64,000 nt of DNA, taken from positions 279,230 through 343,229 of IMG/VR virus record IMGVR_UViG_3300049001_000044. One strand, given 5' to 3'. How positions within the stretch are numbered: the first letter of the stretch is position 1; each line of letters begins with the position of its first letter. The position numbers and the translations under genes were made by a program. The notes beneath the pieces were generated by a model. It saw only the letters and a list, made by a program, of their open reading frames with translations, searched no databases and was not told the DNA's origin. This document shows positions 36,535 through 49,205 of the stretch, in pieces.

Positions 36535-38025
36535 TCAGAATACCTTAACCTGGTATTTGCTTGCAAATCGCTCACCATCTTCTACGGTGTTTACAAGAGG
36601 TTCGCCTTTGATGTTCAGCGAAGTGTTCAGCAGAACAGGGCAGCCGGTCTTCTCATACCACGCCTCTAGCACAGCATTGAAGAAGGGCGACTCATCGTGC
36701 GTAACGGTCTGTAAACGACCAGTACCATCAGCATGGGAGACTGCTGGTAGAGTTGTAGGAACCTTTACGACGCAGACCGCCTGCATGTATGGCACCTTGT
36801 CCAACTTTCCAGGCATGATGAAGTGATCGTGCTTGTATCTGTCCAATACAGCAGGAGCAAATGGTCGGAACTTCTGTCGCTTCTTGATTTCATTGACGCG
36901 ATCCTTCATCAAGTTACTGCGAGGGTCACCAAGTAGAGAGCGATTGCCAAGAGCTCTTGGCCCAAACTCAGCTCTACCAGTCATCACACCACAAACGCCC
37001 GTCGTAAGCAGCTCTTTCACCACGTCTGATGGGTCGATGTCAGAGTCGATGTTCGTACCAAGCATCGCGTTCTTCCAATTCAGTTGAGTGCGCAGATTAT
37101 TCGCGATCGCGCCTAAGGAGTTACCAGCATCGCCAGGATTAGGCATGATCCAGAAGTTGTCGAACTTATCGCCCAGTTTGGTTACTACTTCAGCGTTCGC
37201 AAGACAGTTCAAAGCAACGCCACCTGAGTAAACGATGTTCCTGCAGTTTGTCATGTCCAATGCCATCTCAATAACGCGCGAAATCTTGTGTGTTATGAGA
37301 GTCTGCGCCGCGAGAGCCAAGTCATATCTGCCTTGTTCGCCTTTCGCTTGACAAGCAAACTGGCTGCCTCTCATACCTCGATGGAGATTGGTTGTTTGGT
37401 GAAGATGACCATCGAAGAATTCCTCCTGCATTTCTGCTGCGATGAGGTCTGCACTTGAAGGATTGCCGTATGCGGCCATACCCATCAAGATGTACTCTTC
37501 TTCATTGGGCTTCAGACCTACCAAGTCGGTTACGGCACTGTAGAACAGACCGAGTGAGTGAGGATACTTCAGTGACCACACCCGCTTTAAGTTCGAACCT
37601 TTCCCATGCCAAATGGATGCAGTGGTTAGCTCGCCGATTGCGTCGATGACAACGCACACTGCCTCATCAAAACCTGAAGTGTAGAATCCACCGGCTGCAT
37701 GGGACTGGTGGTGATCGGAGTATTCGATCGGCGCAACAATTCCAAACTGCTTCATGTACTCTTTCGGAAAAGCCTGCATGACCTTGTCGAACTGCCCAGC
37801 CTTTATGAATCTCGCTTTTCTTCCCCATGGGTTCTCAAACCAAACGACCTTGCCTGGGGAACCAAACTGCAAAGCGTCTTGAATCAATTCGTTGTTGAGG
37901 TGTTCGTCGTTCTTAATCCTACTGTACCTTTCGGCATGGCCAGCAAAGAGGATGTCTTTCGTGACCGAATCTACGACCGAAATCGAAGCATCATGGTTAT
38001 CGGCGTTGACGCCCCAGATAATCAT
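36535..38025 (-). CDS. Carbamoyltransferase (NodU/CmcH/TobZ family)
   Basis: HDAS, ERYSRIK, HHQSHA, GGVALNC, EFGPRALGNRS, RPFAP, LNTSLN. Confidence 0.93.
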   Translation of the reverse strand: MIIWGVNADNHDASISVVDSVTKDILFAGHAERYSRIKNDEHLNNELIQDALQFGSPGKVVWFENPWGRKARFIKAGQFDKVMQAFPKEYMKQFGIVAPIEYSDHHQSHAAGGFYTSGFDEAVCVVIDAIGELTTASIWHGKGSNLKRVWSLKYPHSLGLFYSAVTDLVGLKPNEEEYILMGMAAYGNPSSADLIAAEMQEEFFDGHLHQTTNLHRGMRGSQFACQAKGEQGRYDLALAAQTLITHKISRVIEMALDMTNCRNIVYSGGVALNCLANAEVVTKLGDKFDNFWIMPNPGDAGNSLGAIANNLRTQLNWKNAMLGTNIDSDIDPSDVVKELLTTGVCGVMTGRAEFGPRALGNRSLLGDPRSNLMKDRVNEIKKRQKFRPFAPAVLDRYKHDHFIMPGKLDKVPYMQAVCVVKVPTTLPAVSHADGTGRLQTVTHDESPFFNAVLEAWYEKTGCPVLLNTSLNIKGEPLVNTVEDGERFASKYQVKVF

Positions 38026-38098: not shown

Positions 38099-38130
38099 CT
38101 GTTTACAATCAGCGCGAACTTTAGTACAAT
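38099..38130 (+). promoter_or_regulatory. Strong early-type promoter CTGTTTAC-N18-TACAAT
   Basis: GTTTACA/-10 arrangement like T4 early promoters. Confidence 0.7.
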
Positions 38131-38162: not shown

Positions 38163-39029
38163 ATGAAGAAAATCAATGTGGCGGCAACTGTCCTGGTATC
38201 GATGATCCTCTCGGCCTGTGGCGGTGGAGGCGGTGGTAGTTCCACCCAAACCCCACCAGTCGCACAAGTCCCGGTCTCCCTGCCTATCCTCAACATTAAC
38301 GACCAACTCACCAAGTCCGCAAATGCTGACACCCTGGGCTTCGAGCCTGCGAACATGTCCCACACCTCGGGCGAACTGCAAACCAACACTGGGTTCTGGG
38401 GAGTGAAGTCGGCTTCCGCCTACTACGAGAACGTGGTGGGGACGATCGACCCGAATACGAACATCGCCAACGTCACCTTCAACTGGGACATCACGTCCTC
38501 GCAAACCCCTGGCGTTGTGAACTTCTCCAACATCACCTACGGCCTGCACCCTGGCTCCGCCTTCTCCACCACGAAGAAGCTCCCTGTGCGAGTGACGAGC
38601 ATGGGAGACCAGGTGGTAAATGCGGATGTGAAGACGAGCTGCGAGACCACGTGCTCCTACCAAACGATGCTGGACGTCTTCGTGATGAGTTCGAATAGCA
38701 CGAGCAACGCGGACATCGGAACCGAGATCGTCATTCTGACGGATCGCAACATCGGTCCTTCTGATCTGACGGGTGAAACAGCAACGATCGGCGGCGTCAC
38801 CTACAAGGTCGTGCACAACGGCTTCATCACCAACTGGAACGCCATCCAATACTTCGCGCCCATCGGTACCCCGATTAACTCGATGAAGATTAATGTCAAG
38901 GACTTCGTCAACGACGCTTTGCAACGTGGCTGGATTAAGAGCACCGACTACCTGGTCTCCATCGAACTGGGCACGGAAGTAATCCAGGGTAAGGGCAAGA
39001 CCGAGATCAAGAATCTGCACTTCAACTAA
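38163..39029 (+). CDS. Glycoside hydrolase family 12-like (endoglucanase fold) lipoprotein
   Basis: Lipobox LSAC plus poly-Gly; NFSNITYG, YQTMLDVF, GTEIVIL (nucleophile Glu), YLVSIELGTEV (acid/base Glu). Confidence 0.72.
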   Translation: MKKINVAATVLVSMILSACGGGGGGSSTQTPPVAQVPVSLPILNINDQLTKSANADTLGFEPANMSHTSGELQTNTGFWGVKSASAYYENVVGTIDPNTNIANVTFNWDITSSQTPGVVNFSNITYGLHPGSAFSTTKKLPVRVTSMGDQVVNADVKTSCETTCSYQTMLDVFVMSSNSTSNADIGTEIVILTDRNIGPSDLTGETATIGGVTYKVVHNGFITNWNAIQYFAPIGTPINSMKINVKDFVNDALQRGWIKSTDYLVSIELGTEVIQGKGKTEIKNLHFN

Positions 39030-39050: not shown

Positions 39051-39075
39051 AAGGGTAGCGTAGGCTACCCTTTTT
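39051..39075 (+). terminator. Rho-independent terminator after GH12 gene
   Basis: AAGGGTAGC-GTAG-GCTACCCTTTTT. Confidence 0.8.
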
Positions 39076-39082: not shown

Positions 39083-39171
39083 GGACCTCCCAGAGACCTC
39101 CTACCTACTTGATGTAGAAGTTAGTGTCGAAATAGGCTATGCATCTCTGGACCTCTCTGGTAAGCTCTAGC
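39083..39171 (-). repeat. Dispersed element copy E3
   Basis: 55/75 ungapped identity to E4 by manual alignment; begins at the stop codon of 39167-39946. Confidence 0.8.
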
Positions 39172-39946
39172 GATAGTAAGAGTGATGCATGTCCTTGATT
39201 GCGTAGAAGTCATCTACTGAATCCATGCCCAAGACCTCTGCTCGATACATGATCTCTGGGAAGTTACTAGCAACCTTCATGTCCAAGTTAATGGCCTGTC
39301 CGTACTTCGTAAGCCTGGTCCCTGGTCCAAGAACATGATAGTTATCGATCCTCCGTTTTGGCGCTTCACCCTCGCGAATCTTTCGGAAGATATCGCAGAC
39401 CAGATCCATACCCCACGAGTCACCGAAGAAGATGCAATCTGACGCATTGAATTGGTTGTACTCTAATCCCATTCGATAGTTGTGCGGGAAGTAAATCGTG
39501 CGATCACCAATCCAATTGTCTCTTAATTGATCCATCACGCTGGTGTCAGGGTCAAAGACGTTATCGTACCGACATTTGAACACGACATCGTAGCGGAAGC
39601 CCATCTCAATCTCATGTGCACGCTTAAGATGGTTGGCAATCATCATCGACCAATACAAACTGCCAAAAGGAACGTATCCCATTGGCTCCTGCGCCTTGAA
39701 CAAATCTTCTTGCGTCTCAATGACGTAGGAAATTGGATTGAATTGTAACAGCTGTTCAGTCAACCAGTCCTTGTCAAGTTGTTGGTACTCGCCTATTGAA
39801 TGATCAGGAAGTTTCCAAGTGTTGTAGTCCCAAGCATGACAGAAGAAGTCAACTTGAACTCCTTCTGCATTAAAATATCTGAGGATAGATTTCCGAGCGA
39901 ACTCAATCGACCTAGGTTGCCCGGATAAACAGACTGCGATTCTCAT
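39167..39946 (-). CDS. Putative glycosyltransferase-like protein
   Basis: MRIAVCLSGQPR, FFCHAW, YDVVFKCRYD, SDCIFFG. Confidence 0.6.
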   Translation of the reverse strand: MRIAVCLSGQPRSIEFARKSILRYFNAEGVQVDFFCHAWDYNTWKLPDHSIGEYQQLDKDWLTEQLLQFNPISYVIETQEDLFKAQEPMGYVPFGSLYWSMMIANHLKRAHEIEMGFRYDVVFKCRYDNVFDPDTSVMDQLRDNWIGDRTIYFPHNYRMGLEYNQFNASDCIFFGDSWGMDLVCDIFRKIREGEAPKRRIDNYHVLGPGTRLTKYGQAINLDMKVASNFPEIMYRAEVLGMDSVDDFYAIKDMHHSYYR

Positions 39947-40451
39947 AATTGACACACTCAGTGGATAGGGAAAGGGTTTGCAGATGGTAATAGAACTTGG
40001 CGGCGTCATCTACGCTTGGACCGCGGATTTGATTGACGGGAATGTTCTTGAGATTAGTGTGGTACTCACACGCCCTATCGAATTCCCAACTGCGAGCGAT
40101 GAACACGCATGGGTTAACACTCGTCAGCCAATGCTTCTTGTCGAAGCCACCTGTCATGTAGTAGATGAAGTTCTTTTGAAGGTCGACCTTCTTGTCAGCA
40201 TCGTACACCATCTCGATGTGCCTTACGTCGAACATCACATCAGTGTCGTACGCCATACAGATTTTGAATTCGACGTGAGTCTGAAATTCAGCTGTCTTCT
40301 TCTTGTGCGATACAGTTTCGAGGGCAAGAAACTTGTCTTCGTCAAAGTGATGGAAGAAGGTCATTGGGAATGGGAACCACTTCTGAAGCTTAGCTTGAAG
40401 TTCAGTGGTGTCCACACTCTTGGTTCCGTAAAAGCAAACTGCGTAAGTCAT
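39912..40451 (-). CDS. Hypothetical protein, distantly similar to downstream gene
   Basis: YAVCFYG start; late glycan operon context. Confidence 0.6.
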   Translation of the reverse strand: MTYAVCFYGTKSVDTTELQAKLQKWFPFPMTFFHHFDEDKFLALETVSHKKKTAEFQTHVEFKICMAYDTDVMFDVRHIEMVYDADKKVDLQKNFIYYMTGGFDKKHWLTSVNPCVFIARSWEFDRACEYHTNLKNIPVNQIRGPSVDDAAKFYYHLQTLSLSTECVNYENRSLFIRAT

Positions 40452-40458
40452 GTCAACC

Positions 40459-40551
40459 TCAGTAGATGAACGGATCGGATTTGTTCTTCTTTCGCTTGTA
40501 CTGGCGATATGCCATCTTCCAGGATTCGAGTAAGTTCTTAATGAAGGTCAT
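40459..40551 (-). CDS. Very small basic protein (30 aa, not in track)
   Basis: MTFIKNLLES...KRKKNKSDPFIY, coupled. Confidence 0.5.
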   Translation of the reverse strand: MTFIKNLLESWKMAYRQYKRKKNKSDPFIY

Positions 40552-41390
40552 AGGATGTTTCTCATCTTGATTTGATCGTGCAGATATTTAGCCCACGCCG
40601 CATGTCCTGACTCCAATGGGTGACCACCATTTCCTGTTGGATTTTCAGGATAGGACCATTCGCAGAACCACGTTGTCTCCACATTGCTGAACAGCTGGCG
40701 CAGCGTGAAATTTTCTGGCGCGTAAATGAAGTTAGGAGCATTGAAGTTGACCAACTCAAACATCGTCTGTAGCTCTTCAGACTCGACGGCTTTCTCAACG
40801 TCATCCCTTTCGTAGTATTGCTGGATTGAAGACACGAGCGAATGGGTGAATACGTACTTGATCTTCTTCGACTCCAAGAATGTCTTCAGTGAGATGATAC
40901 TTTGCAGGTAGTTGGTAATGTTGTAGATGGGATCACCACTTACCCACTTAACGTGCTTCTTCAGGTAGTCTAGAAATTCAGGTGACAGATCAGTGGTGTT
41001 CTTTTGGATCTGTGCGACAAGATCAGGGATGAACTGTCGCCATTGCCCACGATGTCTAGTCTCAAACCGCTCGTATGCCGTCCATCCGACGATCACGAAG
41101 ATGTCTTCAGGCTTGTGTGTCTTGAGCAACTTGCCAACCGCTGAGATGGTAGTGCGAGCAATCCTTTCGTTGCTGCTTCCGCCCAGACCTTCGTTAAGTA
41201 CCTCCATGCCGAGCGAGCGAGCCAACACCGCAGGCCACGCATGATACTCCATATGAGCGTAGTGTTGAGGGGTCAACGCGCTGTAAGTGCGGCTAGTTGC
41301 AACACCAAACTTCTTTTCATCCCATCCAAATTGTTTATTGCCAAGTTCGCTACCCTCAGTTAGCGAACACCCGTTCGCGTACAAAATCAT
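40548..41390 (-). CDS. SGNH/GDSL hydrolase-like (acyl-esterase/transferase fold)
   Basis: ANGCSLTEG (block I Ser), GGSSNE, GHPLESGH. Confidence 0.7.
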   Translation of the reverse strand: MILYANGCSLTEGSELGNKQFGWDEKKFGVATSRTYSALTPQHYAHMEYHAWPAVLARSLGMEVLNEGLGGSSNERIARTTISAVGKLLKTHKPEDIFVIVGWTAYERFETRHRGQWRQFIPDLVAQIQKNTTDLSPEFLDYLKKHVKWVSGDPIYNITNYLQSIISLKTFLESKKIKYVFTHSLVSSIQQYYERDDVEKAVESEELQTMFELVNFNAPNFIYAPENFTLRQLFSNVETTWFCEWSYPENPTGNGGHPLESGHAAWAKYLHDQIKMRNIL

Positions 41391-41980
41391 GTTACGTCCT
41401 TCATGGTGATAAGAGTGTGCGGGTCAACTTTAACCACTGTCGCCTTCGAAGCACGTGCCGCAGCTATCCCACTTGGTGAATCTTCGAAGATAACAGTATC
41501 ATCGTAATTCACCGAAAGCTTTTCCATTACTTTTTGAAAGATTTCTGGATCAGGCTTAGGCTTGCTAACCTCATCTCCTGCAATGACTAAATCGAGGTAT
41601 GGCTTTACGCCGATCTTTTCCAAGATCAGATCAACATACAGACGACGAGAGTTACTTGCGACAGCAATGTAGAAGGGATTTGCTGAGAAATGTTCCATCA
41701 CCCTAATCGCTTCTTCGTTGCTAGGCAGGTTGGACATCAGCGACATCGTCGCCTCTTGCTTTAAGAGATCAATCTTGCGGACGTCTGCTGCTTTGAGTTG
41801 GTACTTAGCGCGCAAAACTTCCAACTTGTCAATGGTGCGAACGCCGTCGCTTGCATCAAGAAGAGGAAGTTTGGATGCTTCCTCACCAATGACTTCAAGT
41901 ACGGCTTGACGGAATGCGGAGGTGTGAATGGATGAGGTGTCGACTAACACCCCATCGAGATCAAATATTGCAAGTTTCAT
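41387..41980 (-). CDS. HAD-superfamily phosphatase (beta-PGM-like)
   Basis: FDLDGVLVD, KPKPDP, FEDSPSG. Confidence 0.9.
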   Translation of the reverse strand: MKLAIFDLDGVLVDTSSIHTSAFRQAVLEVIGEEASKLPLLDASDGVRTIDKLEVLRAKYQLKAADVRKIDLLKQEATMSLMSNLPSNEEAIRVMEHFSANPFYIAVASNSRRLYVDLILEKIGVKPYLDLVIAGDEVSKPKPDPEIFQKVMEKLSVNYDDTVIFEDSPSGIAAARASKATVVKVDPHTLITMKDVT

Positions 41981-42413
41981 GTGTGACGATGGACACGTAG
42001 TCCGTGCAAATGCCGTAGATGCTCTTATCTATTGCGTTTACGTCGCCAATCAGTTCAGGCATAACTGCGATCGAGTGCCTGCTCAGTTGTTTCCCAGGGT
42101 AGGTCCAAATATAACCTGACGACGTCAATGTGAAGTCGTCTTCTTGGTGCCAGAAGTAATGCTTGGTCTTACAAATACGAAGAGTGTTTAGGGCAGCGAA
42201 GTTCTTCGCATGGCACCATAACCCTGGCGTTTTTAGGAATGAAGGATTGACATGGTAGGTGGGCGCGTCGTGTCCTAACCAGATACCGCCTTGGTGGAAC
42301 CATACATCAATCTCCACGTCATATCCCGCTGCGAGCGCCTCCTCAATGTAGGAGGGCTCATTCTCGCGGTTAGACGGGCCGTTCCTATTACCTCGGTGCG
42401 CGATCAGTCTCAT
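41961..42413 (-). CDS. Short glycerophosphodiesterase-like protein
   Basis: IAHRGN, ENEP, DVEIDV, LGHD, ICTDY. Confidence 0.75.
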   Translation of the reverse strand: MRLIAHRGNRNGPSNRENEPSYIEEALAAGYDVEIDVWFHQGGIWLGHDAPTYHVNPSFLKTPGLWCHAKNFAALNTLRICKTKHYFWHQEDDFTLTSSGYIWTYPGKQLSRHSIAVMPELIGDVNAIDKSIYGICTDYVSIVTHETCNI

Positions 42414-43110
42414 GCTTGATGTATGCCTCTAAATCTTCAGGAGTTCCCACACCATGCATTTCGTCAACTGGCATGGTAATTACTTTGTGACCCAGCGCTA
42501 CGTTTTGAGTGTAGACTGGAGCAACGTAGAATTCGTTCTTGTAGCGGATGTTCTTCTTAATCATTAACTCCGCTGCATCAACGAACTGACTACCCTTGTA
42601 CCAAAAGTAGAGACCTGCTGTGGCATGAGTGCTGACGGGTACCTTCTCAACGACTTCAGTTACGAACCCATGCTTATCCAGCTTCGCGAAGCTCCACTTT
42701 GGATCGGTATCTTCGAACGTCATGATCACACCATCAGCGTGTGTGTAGAGAGGAGTGACACTTGCTTCGTTGAACTTGATGATGTTGTCAGAGTTCATGA
42801 TCGCCAATGGCTCATCATTGTTAATGAGGTGCTTTGCTTGAAGCACGGTACATGCGGCTCCCTCAGTCACGCCATCAATGACGACCACATCACATCCTTC
42901 GTATCGTTCTTGAAGGAAGTTCTTCACGTCGTATTTCTCAACGTGCTCTTTCTGGACGATAAAGATCAGATGTCTAATTGCAAGAGGGAACGAATCTACG
43001 ACATGCTCAATCATCGTCTTACCAAGGAACTTGATGAGGGGCTTTGGGTCAGTGTATCCCGCCGCACTGAAGCGGGACCCTAAACCCGCCATTGGAATGA
43101 GAAGGTTCAT
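42388..43110 (-). CDS. Sugar-phosphate nucleotidyltransferase
   Basis: IPMAGLGSRF, PKPLI, GAACTVL, VVEK, GVGTPEDL. Confidence 0.85.
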   Translation of the reverse strand: MNLLIPMAGLGSRFSAAGYTDPKPLIKFLGKTMIEHVVDSFPLAIRHLIFIVQKEHVEKYDVKNFLQERYEGCDVVVIDGVTEGAACTVLQAKHLINNDEPLAIMNSDNIIKFNEASVTPLYTHADGVIMTFEDTDPKWSFAKLDKHGFVTEVVEKVPVSTHATAGLYFWYKGSQFVDAAELMIKKNIRYKNEFYVAPVYTQNVALGHKVITMPVDEMHGVGTPEDLEAYIKHETDRAPR

Positions 43111-43111
43111 C

Positions 43112-43303
43112 TTAATCACCCAACTTCAGTTCGATGCTCGCGCCCATCTTCAGAAGTTCCTCTAGAGATACCTCCATAACAGAGGCGTACTCCTCACCAC
43201 GAGTGCGAACGTAGAGGTAGTATTTCCCATCTCGTTCGTTAAGCGAGACATAGGCGGGGAGGGTTTGACCGGTTACTTCAGTGTATGCGTAGATGTTGTT
43301 CAT
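43112..43303 (-). CDS. Small hypothetical protein
   Basis: 63 aa; PAYVSLN. Confidence 0.6.
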   Translation of the reverse strand: MNNIYAYTEVTGQTLPAYVSLNERDGKYYLYVRTRGEEYASVMEVSLEELLKMGASIELKLGD

Positions 43304-43311
43304 TTGATTCC

Positions 43312-43581
43312 TCAGGGGTTCTTTTTAACGTATCGAATATTAGGAGGTTCATCTACCTCAACTGCGCCATCAAACATTGATGTATCAATCCAGTCAACAT
43401 CATAGTTGTTTGGGCCGGTGCTGACTCTATACTGCTCACTTGGAAGACCAGCATTTCGTGGCCCTGTCTCTACGAACACTGTCTCACCCGCGTAATCACC
43501 ATGCTCAGGTTTATCAGCGAGTCGATAGCACTTCCCAATCTGTGGTCTAAACGTGGCCTCAAATAGTTCCGCCATTTTCAT
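43312..43581 (-). CDS. Small putative internal head protein
   Basis: Leader MKMAELFE|A. Confidence 0.6.
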   Translation of the reverse strand: MKMAELFEATFRPQIGKCYRLADKPEHGDYAGETVFVETGPRNAGLPSEQYRVSTGPNNYDVDWIDTSMFDGAVEVDEPPNIRYVKKNP

Positions 43582-44501
43582 TTGTTAGCCTCGACTTCGG
43601 TTAGGACTGCATTTAAATTGCGCTTGGGCGCTTCGTAGACGGACTTGAAGAAGGATGATGCGTCAGCGGTCATGTCAGCAATGTTCATACCCAGATCTTT
43701 CTTCAGTGGAATGAGCAGGTCTGCGCTCGCCTTCAACAGGCTTTCTTCGGTTGCAAACTTCGGTTTGATCTCTTCATGGAAGTACTTCTTGAACCAATCG
43801 TAGTCAGAAATCTGTGCGATGTCGAAGTCGGCTTCGATGTTGGCCATGTAGATGCCGAGCCTAGTGCCGTAGACAGCCCACACTCCGTTCTCTACGTCAG
43901 CACCAACAGAAGCCCAAATCAGCAGGCGCTTGTAGTTGGTTGCGTAGACAGAGTTTTGAATGAGACCTGTTGCTTTCGCACCGCGATCAAGAGTCATCTT
44001 CACACCTTCACGGAAGCCTGCGCGGAAGGCTTGGAAGGGCGAGCCATTAATGCACGTGTCGGAGTAGGTGTTGTTGAGCTGGACGTAGTTGTCGTCCCAG
44101 CAGAAGTCTACTTTTTCTTCGTCACGTGTTGCGTTCTCATGAGTGCGCATGTTCAACACGAAGTCTTTGGTCCACAGCTTCAGACCACCGTTGCCGTAGT
44201 GGAGACCGTTGACGATGTTCCTTGCTCCCCAGCTCAGCGTCTTGTCATCGAGATGGGCGGGGATGTCCAACTCCAAATCGAAGAACTCGTCGTAGACTAG
44301 GTTGTCGCCGTCGACAGTGATGAACTTATCAGTACTAGATGCGTTCGCGCAGGCCTTGTGCGCGCTATCAAATCCCTTTACTCCATCAACGCGTTGAGCC
44401 CATGGACACTGATCTTGCAGCTTTGCCCAGAACTCTTCCTTTTGCGGTTCATCATAGGAGAGGTAGAAGAGATCGAAGTCTGAGATGGAATGTTTAGCCA
44501 T
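43578..44501 (-). CDS. GT-A-like glycosyltransferase
   Basis: ITVDGD (DxD), YGNGGLKLW, AFRAGFREG; paralog of the 24507 N-terminal domain. Confidence 0.7.
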   Translation of the reverse strand: MAKHSISDFDLFYLSYDEPQKEEFWAKLQDQCPWAQRVDGVKGFDSAHKACANASSTDKFITVDGDNLVYDEFFDLELDIPAHLDDKTLSWGARNIVNGLHYGNGGLKLWTKDFVLNMRTHENATRDEEKVDFCWDDNYVQLNNTYSDTCINGSPFQAFRAGFREGVKMTLDRGAKATGLIQNSVYATNYKRLLIWASVGADVENGVWAVYGTRLGIYMANIEADFDIAQISDYDWFKKYFHEEIKPKFATEESLLKASADLLIPLKKDLGMNIADMTADASSFFKSVYEAPKRNLNAVLTEVEANK

Positions 44502-45123
44502 TTTGGAATGATACGGATAGAGGCCCCCTCACCGCGAACACTGAGAGATCATCAACGTCTTTCAGGTTAAGGCGAATTGGATTGGGCCAGGATGGGAGGT
44601 TGTTGTAAGTGGTGATTTCGTTGAGGATATTTACGTCCAACGAGAAGGCGCACTTCAGGTACGTCATGTCACCCTCCCTCGTAAAGTACATCTTGACGGG
44701 ATTTGAGATCGTCTTCAGCTTTTCCCCATCGTAGTAAATCTCCACAACACCTTCATCCTTCAACACCTTCAGTCGAATGTCATCCCAGTCATTAGGCTTC
44801 ACCTCATAAATGCCCAACCCAATATCTACGCGATTCAGTTTGACAGTGTGCGGTTGAATCTTTTGGAAGACAAACAACTTGTCATCAGGTATGATCGACC
44901 ACGAGATTGGATTCTCTTCGCCGGTGATGAACTTCAAACCCAACTCATAATCCACTTCTAAACATTTCTCATCTTCCACCGTCACGTCACACGAGCTAAT
45001 CGACTTAATTTGCAGAGTGGTGCTGTTAAAGTGGACGTAGAATTTTGGTTCGACGGGTGCGGGTGCGGGTGTTGGCGCAAAGTCTTGCGTGCTAGACAGC
45101 ACTTGCATGAGCTGTTCGATCAT
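44494..45123 (-). CDS. Hypothetical protein
   Basis: 209 aa, coupled in operon. Confidence 0.65.
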   Translation of the reverse strand: MIEQLMQVLSSTQDFAPTPAPAPVEPKFYVHFNSTTLQIKSISSCDVTVEDEKCLEVDYELGLKFITGEENPISWSIIPDDKLFVFQKIQPHTVKLNRVDIGLGIYEVKPNDWDDIRLKVLKDEGVVEIYYDGEKLKTISNPVKMYFTREGDMTYLKCAFSLDVNILNEITTYNNLPSWPNPIRLNLKDVDDLSVFAVRGPLSVSFQNG

Positions 45124-45977
45124 ACTCCCAGCTTCCTTTCCATTGTGTTGATCATTTTATCGGTCATGAACTCTTTCACATGATAATGAAGAGGCAGCTG
45201 TTGAGCGTAGTTACCAATCTTCAACGAGCAATCCCTATTGAAGTAGTAGGGGACAATCTTAGTCCAGTCTTCGACCATGAACTGACCTTCAGGCCAACCT
45301 TGCAGTTGCGACTTCATGTGGACGAACGTAGGCAGGTCCGATTCAGAGTAGAGGTTGTAGGATGGGTAGTCTAGAATCTTTGCCGCGATACCGAACACAA
45401 CGTCAGTTGATACGAACTTTGGTCGATGTTCTGGCTCCAAGAATTCGTAGAAGCAGCGCTCCCAGTTGTTGAAGATGAACTCACAAAGACGGAAGAACTC
45501 AAAGTTCAAATCGTTCTTCTTGAAGTAGAACATCGCGCTGTAGACATTAGGAAGGTTCGACTCGGTGAAGGTCTTACGATAATAATCGCTAGTGATAACC
45601 TCCCCACGATACGTCTTCGCCTTCGTACAGAACACGCCTTCGCTGTCAGACAGCATATCCCACCAGTGAGAGATGTCACCAGGGAAAATCATGTCCGCAT
45701 CCAACTTGATTGTCTCATCGTAAGGCGTCATGTAGATCGCCTTCCATTCATTCTCCAACTTCCACGTGCTGTTCTTTGCGTGGTCTTCCCAAGGAATTTC
45801 AACCACTTGATCGAACACTTCCAGGTACTTGGCAGGAATGTTTGTGATCTCATCCTTCGTTACACCAATCGACAGATCATTTGGTCCTGTCTGGGACAGC
45901 TTCAACGACAGTGCGCATGCGTAAGCGAGACGTTGATACGATTCGCCTTGGGCAATAGTGAAGAAACCTCTACTCAT
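45120..45977 (-). CDS. GT8-like glycosyltransferase
   Basis: TPYDETIKLDADM, NVYSAMFYF, STDVVF, FVHMK. Confidence 0.75.
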   Translation of the reverse strand: MSRGFFTIAQGESYQRLAYACALSLKLSQTGPNDLSIGVTKDEITNIPAKYLEVFDQVVEIPWEDHAKNSTWKLENEWKAIYMTPYDETIKLDADMIFPGDISHWWDMLSDSEGVFCTKAKTYRGEVITSDYYRKTFTESNLPNVYSAMFYFKKNDLNFEFFRLCEFIFNNWERCFYEFLEPEHRPKFVSTDVVFGIAAKILDYPSYNLYSESDLPTFVHMKSQLQGWPEGQFMVEDWTKIVPYYFNRDCSLKIGNYAQQLPLHYHVKEFMTDKMINTMERKLGV

Positions 45978-46138
45978 TTGTACCACTCCGGATGTTCTTC
46001 TCTCAATTTAGCGTATGCTTCCTGCTCGTGCTGTCGATATTCAACAGCACGTTCTTCCCATCCAGGACCACCTTCATATCGAATCATGGTCGAATAGAGC
46101 ATCATGATCTGGTATTCTGCTTTTTCTTTCTCCGTCAT
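45974..46138 (-). CDS. Small protein (54 aa, not in track)
   Basis: MTEKEKAEYQ...EHPEWYK, coupled both sides. Confidence 0.55.
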   Translation of the reverse strand: MTEKEKAEYQIMMLYSTMIRYEGGPGWEERAVEYRQHEQEAYAKLREEHPEWYK

Positions 46139-47007
46139 TTGAGTGCCTCCATGATTTCGTTCATGTTGTTGAGTAGGGAAAGCTTGTTCATGCAGTGTAC
46201 GTTCAAACCGTTAGTCGTCACACCTTGGTACTTCCAAGTCTCTTGACGATCCTGGTGGAAGAAGTGTAATTTTGCTGGTGAGCTAATGCCGAAGAATTGG
46301 TCGGTATCAAGTGCAGATAGGATCGTTGGATCTGGTAGAGACACAACGTAGTTCGACTCTTCGAACAGACCGTTCAGAATGTGGATCGCAATGGAGAAGG
46401 CGTAGTCATTCCTAAACAAGGCGCCCGGAAAATCGTACGTTAGCTGATAGAAGTCCCAGTTGTCTTTGACGTGCTCTACCAAATCGAATAATCTCTTTGC
46501 CTTCTCGCCCTTTCGGAAGTAGATGACAGTAGCCCAGTACATTGGGATGCCGTATGGGTTCAACCTATCTTCCGCACCTTGAAGTTTGTTGTGGAAGAGG
46601 TCAGTCGCATACTTGTTGATTTGGAATTCCTCCTCACTGCCCCATACATGGGAGAGGACGTCGTTGCAGACGAGGAAGTCGCAGTCGATTAGGAGGGTCT
46701 CATCGTATGGAGACAAGTCATAGACCGTGCTTCTGCTTTCGTTCTTGAATTGGGCTTCGAACCCATAGTATTGAGTGTCACGATATCGACGGTTGTTGAC
46801 GAACTTTTGTTCTTGTTCTTCAATCAACACCACAGAGTCGAACAGTGTGTAGACGTCATGGCGAGGATCGACGGAGCCTTTATCGCTGATCAGGCAGACG
46901 TTGGTGCCTGGCATGTTCTTGCGGATAAAGGATGCGCACATAATCGCAAGCTGGACGTAATCAATACGGGCGTTATTGACGCCGAAGATTACAACACCAC
47001 GAGACAT
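46135..47007 (-). CDS. GT8-like glycosyltransferase paralog
   Basis: SPYDETLLIDCDF, WATVIYF, RNDYAF, VHCMNK. Confidence 0.75.
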   Translation of the reverse strand: MSRGVVIFGVNNARIDYVQLAIMCASFIRKNMPGTNVCLISDKGSVDPRHDVYTLFDSVVLIEEQEQKFVNNRRYRDTQYYGFEAQFKNESRSTVYDLSPYDETLLIDCDFLVCNDVLSHVWGSEEEFQINKYATDLFHNKLQGAEDRLNPYGIPMYWATVIYFRKGEKAKRLFDLVEHVKDNWDFYQLTYDFPGALFRNDYAFSIAIHILNGLFEESNYVVSLPDPTILSALDTDQFFGISSPAKLHFFHQDRQETWKYQGVTTNGLNVHCMNKLSLLNNMNEIMEALK

Positions 47008-47008
47008 G

Positions 47009-47392
47009 TCACACTCCTAGTACGTCAGCGGTGTTTCGCTTTTGTCTGATCGACTTGTATTCGACCATAAATTCGTTCATGACTTCGTAGTACTTGCCAA
47101 CGATGTCATCTTGGAATTTTGCGAGATCAGTGATTTCGATTGGATTCCTATTCGCATCGTTCAAGATGACGTTCTCTTGGCCCATACCAAGAAGCGTCTG
47201 TACGAAGGAGATAAGTTCAGGGGTGATTTTGAAGATGCCGCCATTCACAGAGTAGGTGAGACCTTTGTCTGCTTTGATGCGAGCGTTTTCGACTTGGTTG
47301 TTGAGGGTGATGCGGTAGTTGGCTTTAGCGATTACGTCCTCGAGACGAGTGTCGATCGCTGCCTTGATTTCAGGCTGAGAATTTCTCTTCAT
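47009..47392 (-). CDS. Hypothetical protein, first gene of late glycan operon
   Basis: GCTAAATA at 47454-47461 upstream. Confidence 0.65.
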   Translation of the reverse strand: MKRNSQPEIKAAIDTRLEDVIAKANYRITLNNQVENARIKADKGLTYSVNGGIFKITPELISFVQTLLGMGQENVILNDANRNPIEITDLAKFQDDIVGKYYEVMNEFMVEYKSIRQKRNTADVLGV

Positions 47393-47465
47393 GATGGGTA
47401 TATCCGATGGGAGTTGGAGAGAGCTTCCACTCTCTCCATTTTGGTAACAAGACTATTTAGCCTTA

Positions 47466-49205
47466 TCAGGTTCCTGCTGCTGCGCTGAGGAAGGTTCCTG
47501 CTGCCGAGACAGAAGGGACAACCACTGCTGGGGTATCGATGTATGGCAGGCCGGCGACGGTTGCTGCGGATACACGAACGTCGGTTGCGACAGTCACCTT
47601 GCTGATGACTTGGCCTGCTGCGTAGTCTTCGTTGAAGATCAAGCTCACAGTCAATTTCGCGGTGGCTGAGTTGTACACTGCATTCACGACCAAACTGCCT
47701 GTACCGTACGCACCACTACGGTTGAACGATGCGATCGTTCTTGCTGTGGTATTCAAGTCGTAGAAGCCGTAGGTAGTCGTGCCGCCCGAGTTGTACGCGC
47801 CATTGAAACCGATCTTCGTGCCAGTGTAGTCAAGCACGATACCTGACGTGTTCAGACCCGCATTGACGATGGTGTTGTACCACTCATGACCAACGCCTGC
47901 GCCATCGGTAAGGGAGATGGTAAAGCGCGCAGAACCAGCTTGATTGAAGAAGGCGTACGCTGCTGCATTCGATGCAAAGGTAAACGTCAAATCCAACTGG
48001 CGTGTGGAAGCCCAAGTACCAGTCGTTGCATCAGAACGAAGCGAGGAGATGTTCATACTTGCTGCGTTAGGCGAGAAGCGGTTTGCCTCAAGCGCGTCGA
48101 CACCTGCAGTGAGAGCATTCCAGTTAGTAACGATACCTTGGATACCATAACCACTCCATCCAGCAACCCAATTGACGTTTGGCGAATACGCATTTGCGGT
48201 AGCGTGAGAGCCGCGGCCATCATAAATGAAACCGATCGAGCCAGTATTGTCAGCTGCCGCTGTGTGACGAAGAGCTTTTTTCAGACGGGACAGAAGGATG
48301 GTCCACTTAACGTTGTCAAACTGCGAAGGAGTGTTCATGTTAGTGAAGACTTCCAACGTATCAGTTTGACCCCAACCCCACTGATTGTCTGCGGGATCAG
48401 GAGCGGAACCAGAAGTTGATGGTGCGCCAATGACTCTGTTGATTCGGGTTGCCAGCGCATTGTACTCGTTATAGGAAGCGTAGCGAGTAACGCTTGGCCA
48501 TACCTGTGCCCATGAGCTGTTGAAGTATAGTGGCTGATCGGCTGTCGATTGCATCGAGTTGTCTACGCGCACGTACAGAATCTTCTCTGACGTCGACCAC
48601 CACAGACTACCAACTGTGGAAGCAGCCCCAGCTGTTGGAGGGGTAGCAGTTGTGGTGACGCCCTGACCTGCGCCAACGTTCGTCCAAGTACTAGTCGAAG
48701 CGTCATACACTTTCAGCACGCCAGAGCTGGTGTCAAACCACAGCTGACCAGTCTGAGGATTTGCTGGTGCGGTTGCGGATGGTTGACCACCTCCGCCAAC
48801 GCTAGTCCACTGGGTACCATTCCACACCTTGAGGGTAGTGGTGGTGTTGTCGAACCACATGTCACCGAGTTGTGGCGCGGATGGTTGCGTGCTAGATGGA
48901 AGAACACCACCGACGAGGTGCCACGTTTGGTCAATGCCGTATACTTTCAGCTTCGTGCTTACTGTATCATACCATGCTTGACCAACGGTAGGGTGTGAGG
49001 GTGCTGTTTTGGAAGCGAAGTTCTCCAACAGACGGATGAAGTTTTCCTGTTGGATTTCACCGTAGTTTGGAACGCCTTTACCCGTAAGGGTGAGGGAAGT
49101 AGAAGTAGCGTCTACTACGCTTTGTGGCAAGTCAATGGTTGTCTTGCCTGGGATCGATGGCGAAGTCTCAATACCACCGCTTTGGTAGTCTACCTTGTAG
49201 CTCAT
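47466..49205 (-). CDS. Tail fibre/baseplate-associated protein
   Basis: YGEIQQENFIRLLENFA; repeated P..G[QD]xW[YF]D...LKV modules; AATAAATA at 49273-49280. Confidence 0.75.
   Translation of the reverse strand: MSYKVDYQSGGIETSPSIPGKTTIDLPQSVVDATSTSLTLTGKGVPNYGEIQQENFIRLLENFASKTAPSHPTVGQAWYDTVSTKLKVYGIDQTWHLVGGVLPSSTQPSAPQLGDMWFDNTTTTLKVWNGTQWTSVGGGGQPSATAPANPQTGQLWFDTSSGVLKVYDASTSTWTNVGAGQGVTTTATPPTAGAASTVGSLWWSTSEKILYVRVDNSMQSTADQPLYFNSSWAQVWPSVTRYASYNEYNALATRINRVIGAPSTSGSAPDPADNQWGWGQTDTLEVFTNMNTPSQFDNVKWTILLSRLKKALRHTAAADNTGSIGFIYDGRGSHATANAYSPNVNWVAGWSGYGIQGIVTNWNALTAGVDALEANRFSPNAASMNISSLRSDATTGTWASTRQLDLTFTFASNAAAYAFFNQAGSARFTISLTDGAGVGHEWYNTIVNAGLNTSGIVLDYTGTKIGFNGAYNSGGTTTYGFYDLNTTARTIASFNRSGAYGTGSLVVNAVYNSATAKLTVSLIFNEDYAAGQVISKVTVATDVRVSAATVAGLPYIDTPAVVVPSVSAAGTFLSAAAGT

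What the first reader, a model, noticed from the sequence alone, without database searches (positions are those of the whole stretch)
39167..47461. Late glycan-building operon directly downstream of a tail-fibre-like gene
Seen: after GCTAAATA come two GT8-like paralogs, a DxD GT-A protein, a nucleotidyltransferase + GDPD-like + HAD phosphatase trio, an SGNH protein and two further GT-like ORFs, mostly coupled or nearly abutting. Inference: a complete pathway that activates an unusual sugar or polyol phosphate, polymerises it and acylates it. Late timing and position favour glycosylation of virion fibres or capsid, or masking of host receptors, over DNA modification.
Basis: partly seen in the sequence, partly recalled or inferred. 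Interest (0 to 1): 0.62.

Follow-up and report, generated by a model that had tools for sequence, protein, structure and literature searches.

The report
Jumbo-phage fibre-linked glycosylation gene cluster
A soil jumbo phage carries, right after a fibre-like gene, three sugar-transferase-like enzymes that hundreds of related uncultured phages keep in the same place, followed here by a swappable set of sugar-activating and sugar-decorating genes. It most likely coats a virion protein with a strain-specific glycan, and this has not been shown.

Summary
The gene cluster is real. It lies on the minus strand (47392 down to 39167), is tightly packed, and ends at a hairpin.

It has two layers:
- **Conserved core:** g127, two GT8-fold paralogs (GTa, GTb), g209 and a DxD protein (g307). 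This core follows fibre-like genes in all 80 related viral loci examined, out of at least 585 in IMG/VR.
- **Variable cassette:** nucleotidyltransferase, a minimal GDPD-fold enzyme, a beta-phosphoglucomutase-family HAD, an SGNH-like DUF6071 protein and two DUF7796-type proteins. Relatives carry other tailoring genes at this position, mostly radical SAM enzymes. The nucleotidyltransferase/HAD/GDPD/DUF7796 set is shared with cyanomyoviruses.

Late timing is plausible. A T4-late-like motif (ATAAATA) is enriched upstream of genes across the genome and sits before the fibre gene.

DNA glycosylation is a serious rival, because the genome encodes a T4 gp42-like dCMP hydroxymethylase. It is weakened because a T4 beta-glucosyltransferase homolog lies about 6 kb from that hydroxymethylase, and because complete relatives with no thymidylate-synthase homolog keep the core.

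None of the cluster proteins has a membrane segment, which argues against assembly of a host surface polysaccharide.

Best reading: glycosylation of a virion or fibre protein in the cytoplasm (confidence 0.45). The donor sugar, the acceptor and "polymerisation" are all unproven.

The parts
49274..49280 (-). ATAAATA late-type promoter-like motif, about 68 nt upstream of the fibre-like gene
   Evidence: The motif occurs 62 times in the genome. 38 copies lie within 150 nt upstream of a same-strand ORF, against a random mean of 6. These include the homolog of the tail sheath that was confirmed by mass spectrometry in RsoM2USA.
47466..49205 (-). Fibre-like structural protein (579 aa, 22.8% Ser+Thr) with N-terminal repeat motifs
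   Evidence: PHROG hits to virion structural proteins. tblastn hits to cyanophage tail-fibre genes and to jumbo-phage ORFs. The N-terminus is conserved and the C-terminus varies among relatives. One to three copies, or split versions, lie upstream of the core in relatives.
47454..47461 (-). GCTAAATA, a one-mismatch variant of the late-type motif, 61 nt upstream of g127
   Evidence: A TAAATA-core motif sits at the equivalent position in the 8 closest relatives.
47415..47438 (.). 9-bp-stem hairpin between the fibre gene and g127. It has no U-tract on the transcribed (minus) strand.
47009..47392 (-). g127, a conserved 127-aa protein of unknown function and the first gene of the core
   Evidence: Present directly upstream of GTa in 80/80 loci. 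No Pfam, PHROG or PADLOC hit.
46135..47007 (-). GTa, a GT8-fold (retaining-type GT-A) glycosyltransferase-like protein
   Evidence: AF2 model pLDDT 92. Foldseek best matches are glycogenin, GlyE and GT6, E about 1e-7. D108, D110 and H209 are invariant. 677 homologs, none with a Pfam domain.
45120..45986 (-). GTb, a paralog of GTa
   Evidence: 24% identity, E=7e-9. phrog_1903. D96, D98 and H223 are at least 95% conserved in 64 sequences. Present in 79/80 loci.
44494..45123 (-). g209, a protein of unknown function conserved in the closer relatives
   Evidence: 34-56% identity in L004-L011. No family hit.
43578..44501 (-). g307, a DxD GT2-like glycosyltransferase-like protein and the best-conserved core member
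   Evidence: Atlas model pTM 0.87, structural neighbours are 'Glycosyltransferase 2-like' viral clusters. D64, D66 and N67 are at least 95% conserved in 59 sequences. 52% identical homolog in RsoM2USA. Present in 76/80 loci.
43312..43581 (-). g89, a small ORF and the first gene of the variable cassette
   Evidence: 81% identical copy only in the closest relative, L010.
43112..43303 (-). g63, a small ORF with no relatives found
42388..43110 (-). Sugar-1-phosphate-type nucleotidyltransferase. The ATG start at 43110 is more likely than the GTG at 43119.
   Evidence: PF00483, E=1.8e-10. PDB 4evw, E=9e-20. NCBIfam hits are to sugar-1-P nucleotidyltransferases, all below the equivalog cut-offs. 48-52% identical to the C-terminal half of the cyanophage HAD-nucleotidyltransferase fusions.
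41961..42413 (-). Minimal (150-aa) enzyme of the GDPD superfamily
   Evidence: Model pLDDT 94.6. VIA Z 8.0-10.9 to 22 GDPD/PLD chains, with unrelated barrels at or below 7.1. Foldseek top hits are all GDPD. Profile hit to 7e0v at E=0.009 over the HR..EN..ExD..HD motif. H6, R7, E17, N18, E34, D36 and H48 are invariant. 1734 homologs.
41387..41980 (-). HAD-IA hydrolase or mutase of the beta-phosphoglucomutase family
   Evidence: PF13419, E=6e-26. TIGR02009, E=1.3e-30, below cut-off.
40548..41390 (-). DUF6071 protein, SGNH-like by its motifs
   Evidence: PF19547, E=1.8e-15. G[DC]S, GGSN and C-terminal His are conserved with L010 and L024. No PDB relative.
39912..40451 (-). g179, a possible divergent DUF7796-like protein
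   Evidence: hhalign against the DUF7796 alignment: probability 68%, E=4.9e-5. No other hit.
39167..39946 (-). DUF7796-family protein (259 aa from M22), the candidate transferase of the mobile module
   Evidence: Atlas start and structural neighbours. Homologs carry PF25072. phrog_13607. Homologs in the cyanophage cassettes and in L026. No PDB relative by profile.
39051..39072 (.). Terminator-like hairpin (9-bp stem) between the convergent operon end and the end of the GH12 gene
38163..39029 (+). GH12-domain lipoprotein (LSAC lipobox) on the opposite strand, with a sigma70-like promoter at 38102-38130
   Evidence: PF01670, E=3.5e-11.. It is the only protein in the region with a hydrophobic N-terminus.
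36535..38025 (-). NodU/CmcH-type carbamoyltransferase, probably part of the glycan-tailoring set
   Evidence: PF16861 and PF02543. It occupies the same position downstream of the core in L004, L014, L015, L020 and L021.
34418..36495 (-). Second fibre-like protein (553 aa, 25% Ser+Thr), preceded by ATAAATA at 36526-36532, plus a 138-aa chaperone-like ORF
   Evidence: phrog_15433 and the PaBG homolog. Composition. Motif. g138 PHROG hits. The position-equivalent genes in L004 hit Gp53-like_C and Phage_tail_APC.

Best explanation
This is a late-expressed, cytoplasmic glycosylation system that decorates a virion protein. The most likely target is the fibre-like protein(s) encoded immediately upstream and downstream.

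Three soluble GT-A-type transferases (GTa and GTb with a GT8-like fold, and g307, GT2-like) build a short core glycan on the acceptor. This core, together with g127 and usually g209, is inherited vertically across a large clade of roughly 300-600 kb jumbo phages.

Behind the core sits an exchangeable tailoring cassette. In this phage the cassette would work as follows:
- The nucleotidyltransferase, fed by the beta-phosphoglucomutase-family HAD (acting as mutase or phosphatase), makes an NDP-activated sugar or polyol phosphate.
- The minimal GDPD-fold enzyme supplies or trims a glycerophospho-type diester.
- The DUF7796 proteins transfer the activated group.
- The SGNH-like protein adds or removes an ester.
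- The carbamoyltransferase O-carbamoylates.

**Shown:** gene order, folds, motifs, conservation, absence of membrane segments, and promoter-motif statistics.
**Inferred:** catalytic activity, the donor, the acceptor, the order of steps, and the biological role (a strain-specific virion surface that affects adsorption or recognition).
For: 1. **Linkage to fibre genes.** The order fibre-like gene(s), g127, GTa, GTb, g307 holds in 80/80 IMG/VR loci at 34-65% GTa identity, plus five metagenomic loci at 58-72% and RsoM2USA at 40%. Flanking genes such as PhoH are lost outside the closest relatives. Where no fibre hit was scored, Ser/Thr-rich ORFs of about 300 aa with the same N-terminal motifs lie upstream.
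2. **Catalytic competence.** The DxD motifs of all three GT-like proteins are invariant or at least 95% conserved.
3. **GT8 fold.** GTa's nearest solved folds include glycogenin and GlyE, which I recall as protein-glycosylating GT8 enzymes. BFVD neighbours include giant-virus GT8 proteins.
4. **Soluble enzymes.** No cluster protein has a transmembrane-grade hydrophobic segment.
5. **Late promoter.** A late-type promoter motif lies upstream of both fibre-like genes, and a positionally conserved variant lies upstream of g127.
6. **DNA glycosylation is accounted for elsewhere.** A gp42-like hydroxymethylase (E=6.8e-68) lies about 6 kb from a T4 beta-glucosyltransferase homolog.
7. **Core without thymidylate-synthase homologs.** The core persists in 100%-complete relatives with no thymidylate-synthase-family gene (G002, G003) or only a canonical ThyA (G006; also G007, 92% complete).
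8. **Hypervariable cassette.** The ORFs after g307 vary between relatives: radical SAM in 47 of 125 ORFs, SPASM, UDP-glucose dehydrogenase, methyltransferase, cupin, carbamoyltransferase, nucleotidyltransferase and HAD. This resembles diversifying surface-glycan loci.
9. **Precedent.** Virion glycosylation by phage-encoded transferases is known in mycobacteriophages (Freeman et al. 2023, as cited in PMC12619734).
Against: - There is no direct evidence for any glycan on any virion of this clade. The RsoM2USA virion proteomics covered only the abundant bands.
- Synteny within a single phage family may reflect conserved genome architecture and not a functional link.
- In this genome the main structural module (sheath at about 171-173 kb) is far from the cluster.
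- The fibre assignment rests on motif and PHROG similarity and on composition only.
- Radical SAM/SPASM enzymes in relatives, and nucleotidyltransferase+HAD sets, also occur in DNA-hypermodification clusters (PMC13326640).
- The search for TET-type routes to hydroxylated bases was uninformative, because the control genomes were also silent.
- The donor substrate could not be assigned: all nucleotidyltransferase and HAD hits are below the equivalog cut-offs.
Confidence: 0.45

Rival explanations
1. DNA hypermodification. The GT core and cassette add and tailor sugars on hydroxymethylcytosine (or another modified base) in phage DNA to evade restriction.
For: - The genome encodes a T4 gp42-like dCMP hydroxymethylase.
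- Characterised phage DNA-arabinosylation clusters combine glycosyltransferases with a nucleotidyltransferase and a HAD phosphatase (PMC13326640).
- I recall that radical SAM enzymes also occur in nucleobase-hypermodification clusters; they sit in the relatives' cassettes and a carbamoyltransferase adjoins this one.
- RsoM2USA's only thymidylate-synthase homolog is divergent and closer to the hydroxymethylase than to ThyA.
Against: - A dedicated T4 beta-glucosyltransferase homolog (PF09198, 62 bits) lies about 6 kb from the hydroxymethylase and roughly 290 kb from this cluster.
- The hydroxymethylase is accessory in the clade while the GT core is universal. Complete genomes G002 and G003 have no thymidylate-synthase-family gene; G006 (complete) and G007 (92% complete) have only ThyA.
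- The thymidylate-synthase homolog is not adjacent to the cluster, unlike in known clusters.
- The promoter motif is of the late type.
- The DNA arabinosyl- and glycosyltransferases modelled in PMC13326640 resemble glycosyltransferases I recall as GT-B fold (BshA, sucrose-phosphate synthase), not GT8-like GT-A.
Confidence: 0.18
2. Host-envelope remodelling. The enzymes modify LPS, capsule or a teichoic-like polymer of the infected cell, for example to block superinfection or alter recognition, as is usually proposed for the cyanophage cassettes.
For: - The nucleotidyltransferase/HAD/GDPD/DUF7796 module is shared with cyanomyovirus glycosyltransferase islands; such islands in other cyanomyoviruses are interpreted as cell-surface modification (PMC12801897).
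- A secreted GH12 lipoprotein is encoded next to the cluster.
- A structural neighbour of the DUF7796 protein is a Campylobacterota 'capsular biosynthesis' family.
Against: - The cluster has no initiating phosphoglycosyltransferase, flippase, polymerase, ABC exporter or any membrane protein.
- Timing appears late in an apparently lytic jumbo phage.
- The core is linked to fibre genes across the whole clade.
- The GH12 gene is on the other strand, has its own sigma70-like promoter, and is absent from relatives.
Confidence: 0.15
3. Modification of a small dedicated protein or metabolite. g127 and/or g209 is a carrier or precursor that the GT-like enzymes glycosylate and that, in relatives, the radical SAM/SPASM enzymes further modify. 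The product would be a RiPP-like glycopeptide or a soluble glycoconjugate acting in infection, not a virion coat.
For: - g127 is as strictly linked to GTa as GTb is (80/80 loci).
- SPASM-type radical SAM enzymes are frequent in the relatives' cassettes; I recall these as typical peptide maturases.
- All the enzymes are soluble.
Against: - g127 and g209 have no recognisable leader/core architecture and are large for RiPP precursors.
- This genome lacks the radical SAM enzyme altogether.
- The idea does not explain the linkage to fibre genes.
Confidence: 0.1

Closest known systems
Mycobacteriophage virion glycosylation operons (Freeman et al. 2023, Cell Host Microbe; cited in PMC12619734)
   Same: Phage-encoded soluble glycosyltransferases are encoded beside structural genes and are proposed or shown to glycosylate virion proteins in the cytoplasm, with strain-to-strain variation.
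   Different: Those systems are in small siphoviruses, with glycans shown on the capsid and tail tube. Here the phage is a jumbo myovirus, the transferases are Pfam-less GT8-like and GT2-like families, the linkage is to fibre-like genes, there is a large exchangeable tailoring cassette, and there are no biochemical data.
Giant-virus glycosylation machinery (Mimivirus fibril glycans including the GT8 glycogenin paralog R707; chlorovirus capsid glycans). From my own knowledge, not tested here.
   Same: Virus-encoded GT8/GT-A enzymes plus NDP-sugar synthesis genes decorate virion fibres independently of host machinery. BFVD fold neighbours of GTa include giant-virus GT8 proteins.
   Different: Those viruses are eukaryotic. 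There is no sequence-level relationship (11-14% identity) and the sugar pathways differ.
Cyanomyovirus glycosyltransferase islands (e.g. S-CAM9 gp059-071, DSL-LC03)
   Same: They share the nucleotidyltransferase (48-52% identity), the GDPD-like protein (46%), the HAD (30-37%) and the DUF7796-like genes.
   Different: In cyanophages the HAD and nucleotidyltransferase are fused, and the partners are GT1, GT2 and fucosyltransferase types. They lack GTa, GTb and g307. Their function is also unknown.
Phage DNA glycosylation clusters (T4 alpha/beta-glucosyltransferases; RB69/DLP3 arabinosyl-5hoC, PMC13326640)
   Same: Glycosyltransferases sit beside an NDP-sugar-supplying nucleotidyltransferase and a HAD phosphatase in a phage genome that makes a hydroxylated pyrimidine.
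   Different: Known clusters sit next to the thymidylate-synthase homolog and their transferases resemble enzymes I recall as GT-B fold. Here the hydroxymethylase and a T4 beta-glucosyltransferase homolog form a separate module, and the GT core occurs without any thymidylate-synthase homolog in relatives.
Bacterial O-antigen and capsule loci
   Same: Conserved transferase genes are flanked by a hypervariable set of sugar-activation and tailoring genes (nucleotidyltransferase, dehydrogenase, methyl-, acetyl- and carbamoyl-transferases).
   Different: The cluster has no undecaprenyl-phosphate initiating enzyme, flippase, polymerase or exporter. All its proteins are soluble.

Membership tests
CAZy GT8 / Pfam Glyco_transf_8 (GTa, GTb) | GT-A fold that most resembles solved GT8 members | tested here: met
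   GTa model: the top Foldseek hits are glycogenin, GlyE and an Anaerococcus GT8, E 1e-7 to 5e-6. TM is only about 0.4. GTb was not modelled; it is a paralog.
CAZy GT8 / Pfam Glyco_transf_8 (GTa, GTb) | Significant match to the family HMM | tested here: not met
   No Pfam or NCBIfam hit except a sub-threshold Gb3_synth match, E=0.025. None of the 120 listed homologs (677 found) carries a Pfam domain.
CAZy GT8 / Pfam Glyco_transf_8 (GTa, GTb) | DxD metal/nucleotide-sugar motif and a downstream His | tested here: met
   D108, D110 and H209 are invariant in GTa. D96, D98 and H223 are at least 95% conserved in GTb.
CAZy GT8 / Pfam Glyco_transf_8 (GTa, GTb) | Retaining transfer from a UDP-sugar | not testable with these tools
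   Needs an enzyme assay.
GT2-like GT-A (g307) | GT-A fold with a DxD motif | tested here: inconclusive
   The Atlas structural and feature neighbours are named 'Glycosyltransferase 2-like'. DGDN is conserved.
Glycerophosphodiester phosphodiesterase (GDPD, PF03009) | TIM-barrel GDPD fold | tested here: met
   VIA Z 8.0-10.9 with 137-146 of 150 residues aligned to 22 GDPD/PLD chains. Unrelated barrels score at or below 7.1. Foldseek's top 10 are all GDPD.
Glycerophosphodiester phosphodiesterase (GDPD, PF03009) | Catalytic His-Arg, Glu-Asn, Glu-x-Asp and His residues | tested here: met
   H6, R7, E17, N18, E34, D36 and H48 are invariant in 24 homologs and align to the motif of 7e0v.
Glycerophosphodiester phosphodiesterase (GDPD, PF03009) | Family HMM match and normal domain length (about 220-250 aa) | tested here: not met
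   No Pfam or NCBIfam hit. The protein is only 150 aa, so I file it as a minimal GDPD-superfamily variant and not as a GDPD.
NTP_transferase (PF00483), sugar-1-phosphate nucleotidyltransferases | Family HMM above the gathering score | tested here: met
   41.2 bits against a cut-off of 21.2. PDB 4evw, E=9e-20. No equivalog cut-off is reached, so the substrate is unknown.
HAD-IA, beta-phosphoglucomutase family | HAD_2 HMM and the DxDG nucleophile motif | tested here: met
   92 bits. The N-terminal FDLDGVL is visible. The TIGR02009 and TIGR01990 scores are below their cut-offs, so mutase versus phosphatase is undecided.
SGNH/GDSL hydrolase-acyltransferase superfamily | Blocks I (GDS), II/III (G, GxN) and V (catalytic His) on an SGNH fold | tested here: inconclusive
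   DUF6071 hit. The G[DC]S, GGSN and C-terminal His motifs are conserved in 3 sequences. The fold was not modelled and no PDB relative was found.
DUF7796 (PF25072) | Family HMM match | tested here: inconclusive
   The query's own score is sub-threshold (17.4 bits against 27). However, 22 of its 77 other homologs carry PF25072 and the Atlas neighbours do too. The family's function is unknown.
T4-type late promoter | TATAAATA-like box enriched about 20-70 nt upstream of late (structural) genes | tested here: met
   ATAAATA: 38 of 62 copies lie upstream of same-strand ORFs against a random mean of 6, with a mode 21-36 nt before the start. These include the sheath homolog. A gp55-type sigma factor was not searched for, and timing was not measured.
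Phage DNA-glycosylation cluster | Dependence on, or co-occurrence with, a base-hydroxylating thymidylate-synthase homolog | tested here: not met
   The core is present in complete G002 and G003 with no PF00303 match, and in G006 and G007 with only ThyA.

The most novel reading that the evidence does not exclude
A large, globally distributed clade of jumbo phages carries a dedicated virion-fibre glycosylation system. Pfam-less GT8-like and GT2-like transferases (with g127) write a core glycan on fibre proteins. An O-antigen-like hypervariable cassette then diversifies it between strains, using radical SAM sugar chemistry in most members and, in this phage, a cyanophage-type nucleotidyltransferase/HAD/mini-GDPD/DUF7796 module that adds a phosphodiester-linked or unusual sugar substituent. 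The result would be a phage 'serotype' that shapes adsorption or escape from host recognition.
Probability: 0.35. Interest if true: 0.75.

Novelty: new variant of a known kind. Interest (0 to 1): 0.6.

Why it matters
- **Scope of virion glycosylation.** If the core glycosylates virion fibres, virion glycosylation would extend from a few actinobacteriophages to a widespread clade of jumbo phages of soil and water.
- **A new axis of phage diversity.** It would reveal a serotype-like variable glycan, with consequences for host range and for recognition of phage particles.
- **Functions for unnamed families.** It would give function to several abundant families that have none: GTa/GTb, g307, g127, DUF7796 and the 150-aa mini-GDPD (more than 1700 homologs, common in marine cyanophages).
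- **A caution for annotation.** A phage can carry two separate glycosylation systems. Here a T4-like hmC/beta-glucosyltransferase module for DNA sits apart from this cluster. Glycosyltransferases in hmC phages should therefore not be assigned to DNA modification by default.

Tried and rejected
- Megablast of the cluster against 50,697 phage records found nothing.
- Sequence searches of the PDB were empty or spurious for GTa, GTb, the DUF6071 protein and the DUF7796 profile.
- PADLOC gave no hit for any cluster protein, so nothing points to a defence or counter-defence family.
- I searched for TET/JBP as an alternative source of hydroxylated bases. Nothing matched, but the control genomes were also silent, so the result is uninformative.
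- Metagenomic loci from the look-up of encoding contigs (L004, L006, L009, L011) could not be searched as whole records. IMG/VR records were used instead.
- g553 was annotated 'tail sheath' by PHROG and by the PaBG record. I rejected this because the homolog of the sheath confirmed by mass spectrometry in RsoM2USA lies at about 171-173 kb. g553 is fibre-like by composition and position.
- I considered whether GCTAAATA is a chance match: 3 copies in the window against 0.73 expected, and 2 of 100 shuffles reach 3. It gains weight only from the genome-wide TAAATA-core analysis and its positional conservation.
- Sequencing-run search found only the probable source soil metagenome and no RNA run.
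- Complex prediction was not used. An enzyme-substrate encounter is a poor target, and a pass would not have changed my odds.
- The search of protein representatives was not used.
- The two structure-prediction jobs went to GTa and the GDPD-like protein. g307, g127, g209, the DUF6071 protein and the DUF7796 protein were therefore not modelled.
- No alternative genetic code was needed.

Full report
**Context**

The window is the last 64 kb of a 343,229-bp virus record with direct terminal repeats, rated 100% complete. It comes from a soil metagenome. Its gene content marks it as a T4-related jumbo myovirus: topoisomerase II subunits, a B-family DNA polymerase, PhoH and RNA ligases. Its nearest cultured relative is Ralstonia phage RsoM2USA (343,806 bp), at only 40-52% protein identity. 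Megablast finds no related phage record.

**Observation**

In order of transcription:

| Gene | Coordinates | Assignment |
|---|---|---|
| fibre-like | 47466-49205 | 579 aa, 22.8% Ser+Thr |
| g127 | 47009-47392 | unknown |
| GTa | 46135-47007 | GT8-like fold |
| GTb | 45120-45986 | paralog of GTa |
| g209 | 44494-45123 | unknown |
| g307 | 43578-44501 | DxD, GT2-like |
| g89, g63 | 43312-43581, 43112-43303 | small ORFs |
| nucleotidyltransferase | 42388-43110 | PF00483 |
| GDPD-like | 41961-42413 | 150 aa |
| HAD | 41387-41980 | beta-phosphoglucomutase family |
| DUF6071 | 40548-41390 | SGNH-like |
| g179 | 39912-40451 | weak DUF7796 relative |
| DUF7796 protein | 39167-39946 | unknown |

Most junctions overlap or nearly abut. 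A terminator-like hairpin at 39051-39072 closes the unit, facing a convergent plus-strand gene for a GH12 lipoprotein. Downstream on the minus strand lie a NodU-type carbamoyltransferase (36535-38025), a second Ser/Thr-rich fibre-like protein (34834-36495) and a small chaperone-like ORF.

**What the proteins are**

- **GTa and GTb** are paralogs (24% identity, E=7e-9). A 22-sequence alignment gave a confident GTa model (pLDDT 92). Its best solved matches are glycogenin, the pneumococcal GlyE and GT6 enzymes, that is, retaining-type GT-A folds (Foldseek E about 1e-7, TM about 0.4). Viral neighbours include giant-virus GT8 proteins. Neither paralog matches any Pfam or NCBIfam glycosyltransferase model. 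They are GT8-like in fold and motif, not demonstrable family members.
- **g307** has a high-confidence Atlas model that clusters with viral 'Glycosyltransferase 2-like' proteins.
- **The DxD motifs** of all three are invariant or at least 95% conserved across 22-64 homologs.
- **The nucleotidyltransferase** is a clear PF00483 member. It is closest to sugar-1-phosphate enzymes and to PDB 4evw.
- **The HAD** belongs to the beta-phosphoglucomutase family.
- **The 150-aa protein** has no Pfam hit. Its profile matches GDPDs over the catalytic motif. Its model (pLDDT 94.6) aligns over nearly its whole length to 22 GDPD/PLD structures at Z 8-10.9, clearly above other TIM barrels. It is a minimal member of the GDPD superfamily, with more than 1,700 homologs of similar length.
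- **The 'SGNH' protein** is a DUF6071 member with GDS- and GGSN-type motifs. Its fold was not tested.
- **The last ORF** belongs to DUF7796 and probably starts at M22. g179 is a weak relative of it. Glycosyltransferase activity for these two is unproven.
- **No cluster protein has a membrane-grade hydrophobic segment.** Only the GH12 lipoprotein has a signal peptide.

**Two layers**

GTa has 677 homologs in the word search, many on 230-360 kb contigs, and at least 585 IMG/VR contigs encode a relative.

In 80 of 80 fetched loci, g127 lies directly upstream of GTa. GTb follows in 79 and g307 in 76; the exceptions are truncated loci. Fibre-like genes lie upstream as one to three tandem copies, or as two split ORFs of about 300 aa. 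The same order holds in five further metagenomic loci and, apart from rearranged flanks, in RsoM2USA.

What follows g307 differs from phage to phage. A scan of 125 downstream ORFs from 35 loci found:
- radical SAM enzymes in 47, nine of them with SPASM domains;
- UDP-glucose dehydrogenase, methyltransferase, cupin, carbamoyltransferase, B12-binding radical SAM and others.

A radical SAM protein of about 470 aa occupies this position in 52-54 of the 80 loci, including the closest relative. This genome has none anywhere.

Here the slot is filled by the nucleotidyltransferase, GDPD-like, HAD, DUF6071 and DUF7796 genes. Nucleotidyltransferase, GDPD-like, HAD and DUF7796-like genes also travel together in cyanomyovirus glycosyltransferase islands (S-CAM9, DSL-LC03) and in locus L026.

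**Timing**

The genome has a promoter-like heptamer, ATAAATA, close to the T4 late box. Of its 62 copies, 38 lie within 150 nt upstream of a same-strand ORF, against a random mean of 6. Most sit 21-36 nt before the start codon. They include the homolog of the RsoM2USA sheath that was confirmed by mass spectrometry.

Copies precede the fibre-like gene (49274-49280) and g553 (36526-36532). However, a TAAATA-core motif occupies the same position, 40-70 nt before g127, in the eight closest relatives. The hairpin between the fibre gene and g127 has no U-tract on the transcribed strand, so read-through from the fibre promoter is also possible. Late expression is therefore plausible. It was not measured, because no RNA data exist.

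**Which acceptor?**

*DNA.* This rival deserves weight. The genome encodes a T4 gp42-like dCMP hydroxymethylase (E=6.8e-68 to PDB 1b49). Known phage DNA-glycosylation clusters combine transferases with a nucleotidyltransferase and a HAD (PMC13326640). Three results weaken it:
1. A T4 beta-glucosyltransferase homolog (PF09198, 62 bits) lies about 6 kb from the hydroxymethylase, roughly 290 kb from this cluster. It gives the hmC its own transferase.
2. The hydroxymethylase is accessory in the clade. Complete relatives that carry the full core have no thymidylate-synthase-family gene at all (G002, G003) or only a canonical ThyA (G006; G007 at 92% completeness).
3. The promoter context is of the late type.

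A TET-type route could not be excluded, because the family search was silent even in the controls.

*Host surface.* Assembly of a host surface polysaccharide is unlikely. There is no initiating transferase, flippase, polymerase, exporter or any membrane protein.

*Virion protein.* The persistent linkage to fibre-like genes, the soluble GT-A enzymes whose nearest folds include glycogenin and GlyE (which I recall as protein-glycosylating GT8s), and the serotype-like variability of the cassette together favour cytoplasmic glycosylation of a virion protein, most simply the adjacent fibres. I put this at 0.45. A dedicated small-protein or metabolite product involving g127 or g209 remains possible.

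**Mechanism of the cassette (inferred)**

- The HAD, as mutase or phosphatase, yields a sugar- or polyol-phosphate.
- The nucleotidyltransferase activates it.
- The DUF7796 proteins transfer it onto the core glycan.
- The mini-GDPD either provides glycerol-3-phosphate-type precursors or processes a phosphodiester.
- The DUF6071 protein adds or removes an ester, and the carbamoyltransferase adds a carbamoyl group.

No equivalog threshold was reached for the nucleotidyltransferase or the HAD, so the donor is unknown.

**Novelty**

Phage-encoded glycosylation of virions (mycobacteriophages; cited in PMC12619734) and of DNA is known, so the kind is not new. What I did not find described in the papers searched:
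- this Pfam-less three-transferase core with g127;
- its clade-wide coupling to fibre genes;
- the hypervariable cassette rich in radical SAM enzymes;
- the mini-GDPD/DUF7796 module shared with cyanophages.

The RsoM2USA record annotates all of these genes as hypothetical. I rate it a new variant of a known kind, interest 0.6.

**Limits**

- Only two structure models were allowed.
- The large representative search, read laying and complex prediction were not used, for the reasons given under Tried and rejected.

Noticed in passing
Outside the window: G000:C1 about 18,000-28,500 (locus L110: 368-2245, 2912-4051, 9724-10476, all minus strand): A probable hmC-DNA modification module. It holds a T4 gp42-like dCMP hydroxymethylase (E=6.8e-68), a T4 beta-glucosyltransferase homolog (PF09198) about 6 kb away, and next to that a 625-aa CofD-like/HAD fusion that might decorate the DNA sugar further.
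   Followed up: partly
Related loci, e.g. L004:13362-14771, L010:9065-10519 (minus strand), L009:13267-19000: A radical SAM protein of about 470 aa, often with extra radical SAM, SPASM or B12-binding paralogs (up to four in a row), follows the g307 homolog in 52-54 of 80 relatives. It is absent from the whole genome of this phage. Its substrate is unknown.
   Followed up: partly
window 38163-39029 (+), promoter-like site at 38102-38130: A GH12-family glycoside hydrolase with a lipoprotein signal peptide (LSAC lipobox), on the opposite strand and convergent with the operon. It has a 10/12 sigma70-like promoter and no counterpart in relatives. It may be a secreted polysaccharide-degrading moron.
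   Followed up: partly
Whole genome; in the window e.g. 49274-49280, 36526-36532, 50442-50449 (all minus strand): A genome-wide ATAAATA promoter-like motif (T4 late-like). It has 62 copies, 38 of them just upstream of same-strand ORFs, with a preferred spacing of 21-36 nt from the start codon.
   Followed up: yes
window 24507-25856 (-): A 449-aa ORF whose N-terminal 160 residues or so are a paralog of g307 (30% identity). It lies near Rnl2-like (26686-27846) and Rnl1-like (29369-30496) RNA ligase genes. RsoM2USA also has a second g307-like gene (ORF348).
   Followed up: no
window 47466-49205 (-); relatives L034, L043-L049, L019, L020, L030: The fibre-like gene is present as 2-3 tandem copies, or split into two Ser/Thr-rich ORFs of about 300 aa, in more distant relatives. 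Its first 100 residues or so also head a second fibre-like gene in L004 and L015. This points to a shared N-terminal anchoring domain with exchangeable distal parts.
   Followed up: partly
window 34418-34834 (-), and genome at about 268,016, 270,660 and 271,148: The 138-aa ORF after the second fibre-like gene has three paralogs just upstream of the window. It hits C-terminal parts of virion structural and HNH-annotated PHROGs. It may be a family of fibre-assembly or chaperone modules.
   Followed up: no
RsoM2USA record MG752970.1, 7754-8101 (locus L012): The only thymidylate-synthase-family match found in RsoM2USA is divergent. It is closer to this phage's hydroxymethylase (26% identity, E=3.6e-20) than to its canonical ThyA. 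The published annotation lists ORF10 and ORF473 as thymidylate synthases. Which base it makes is unknown.
   Followed up: no
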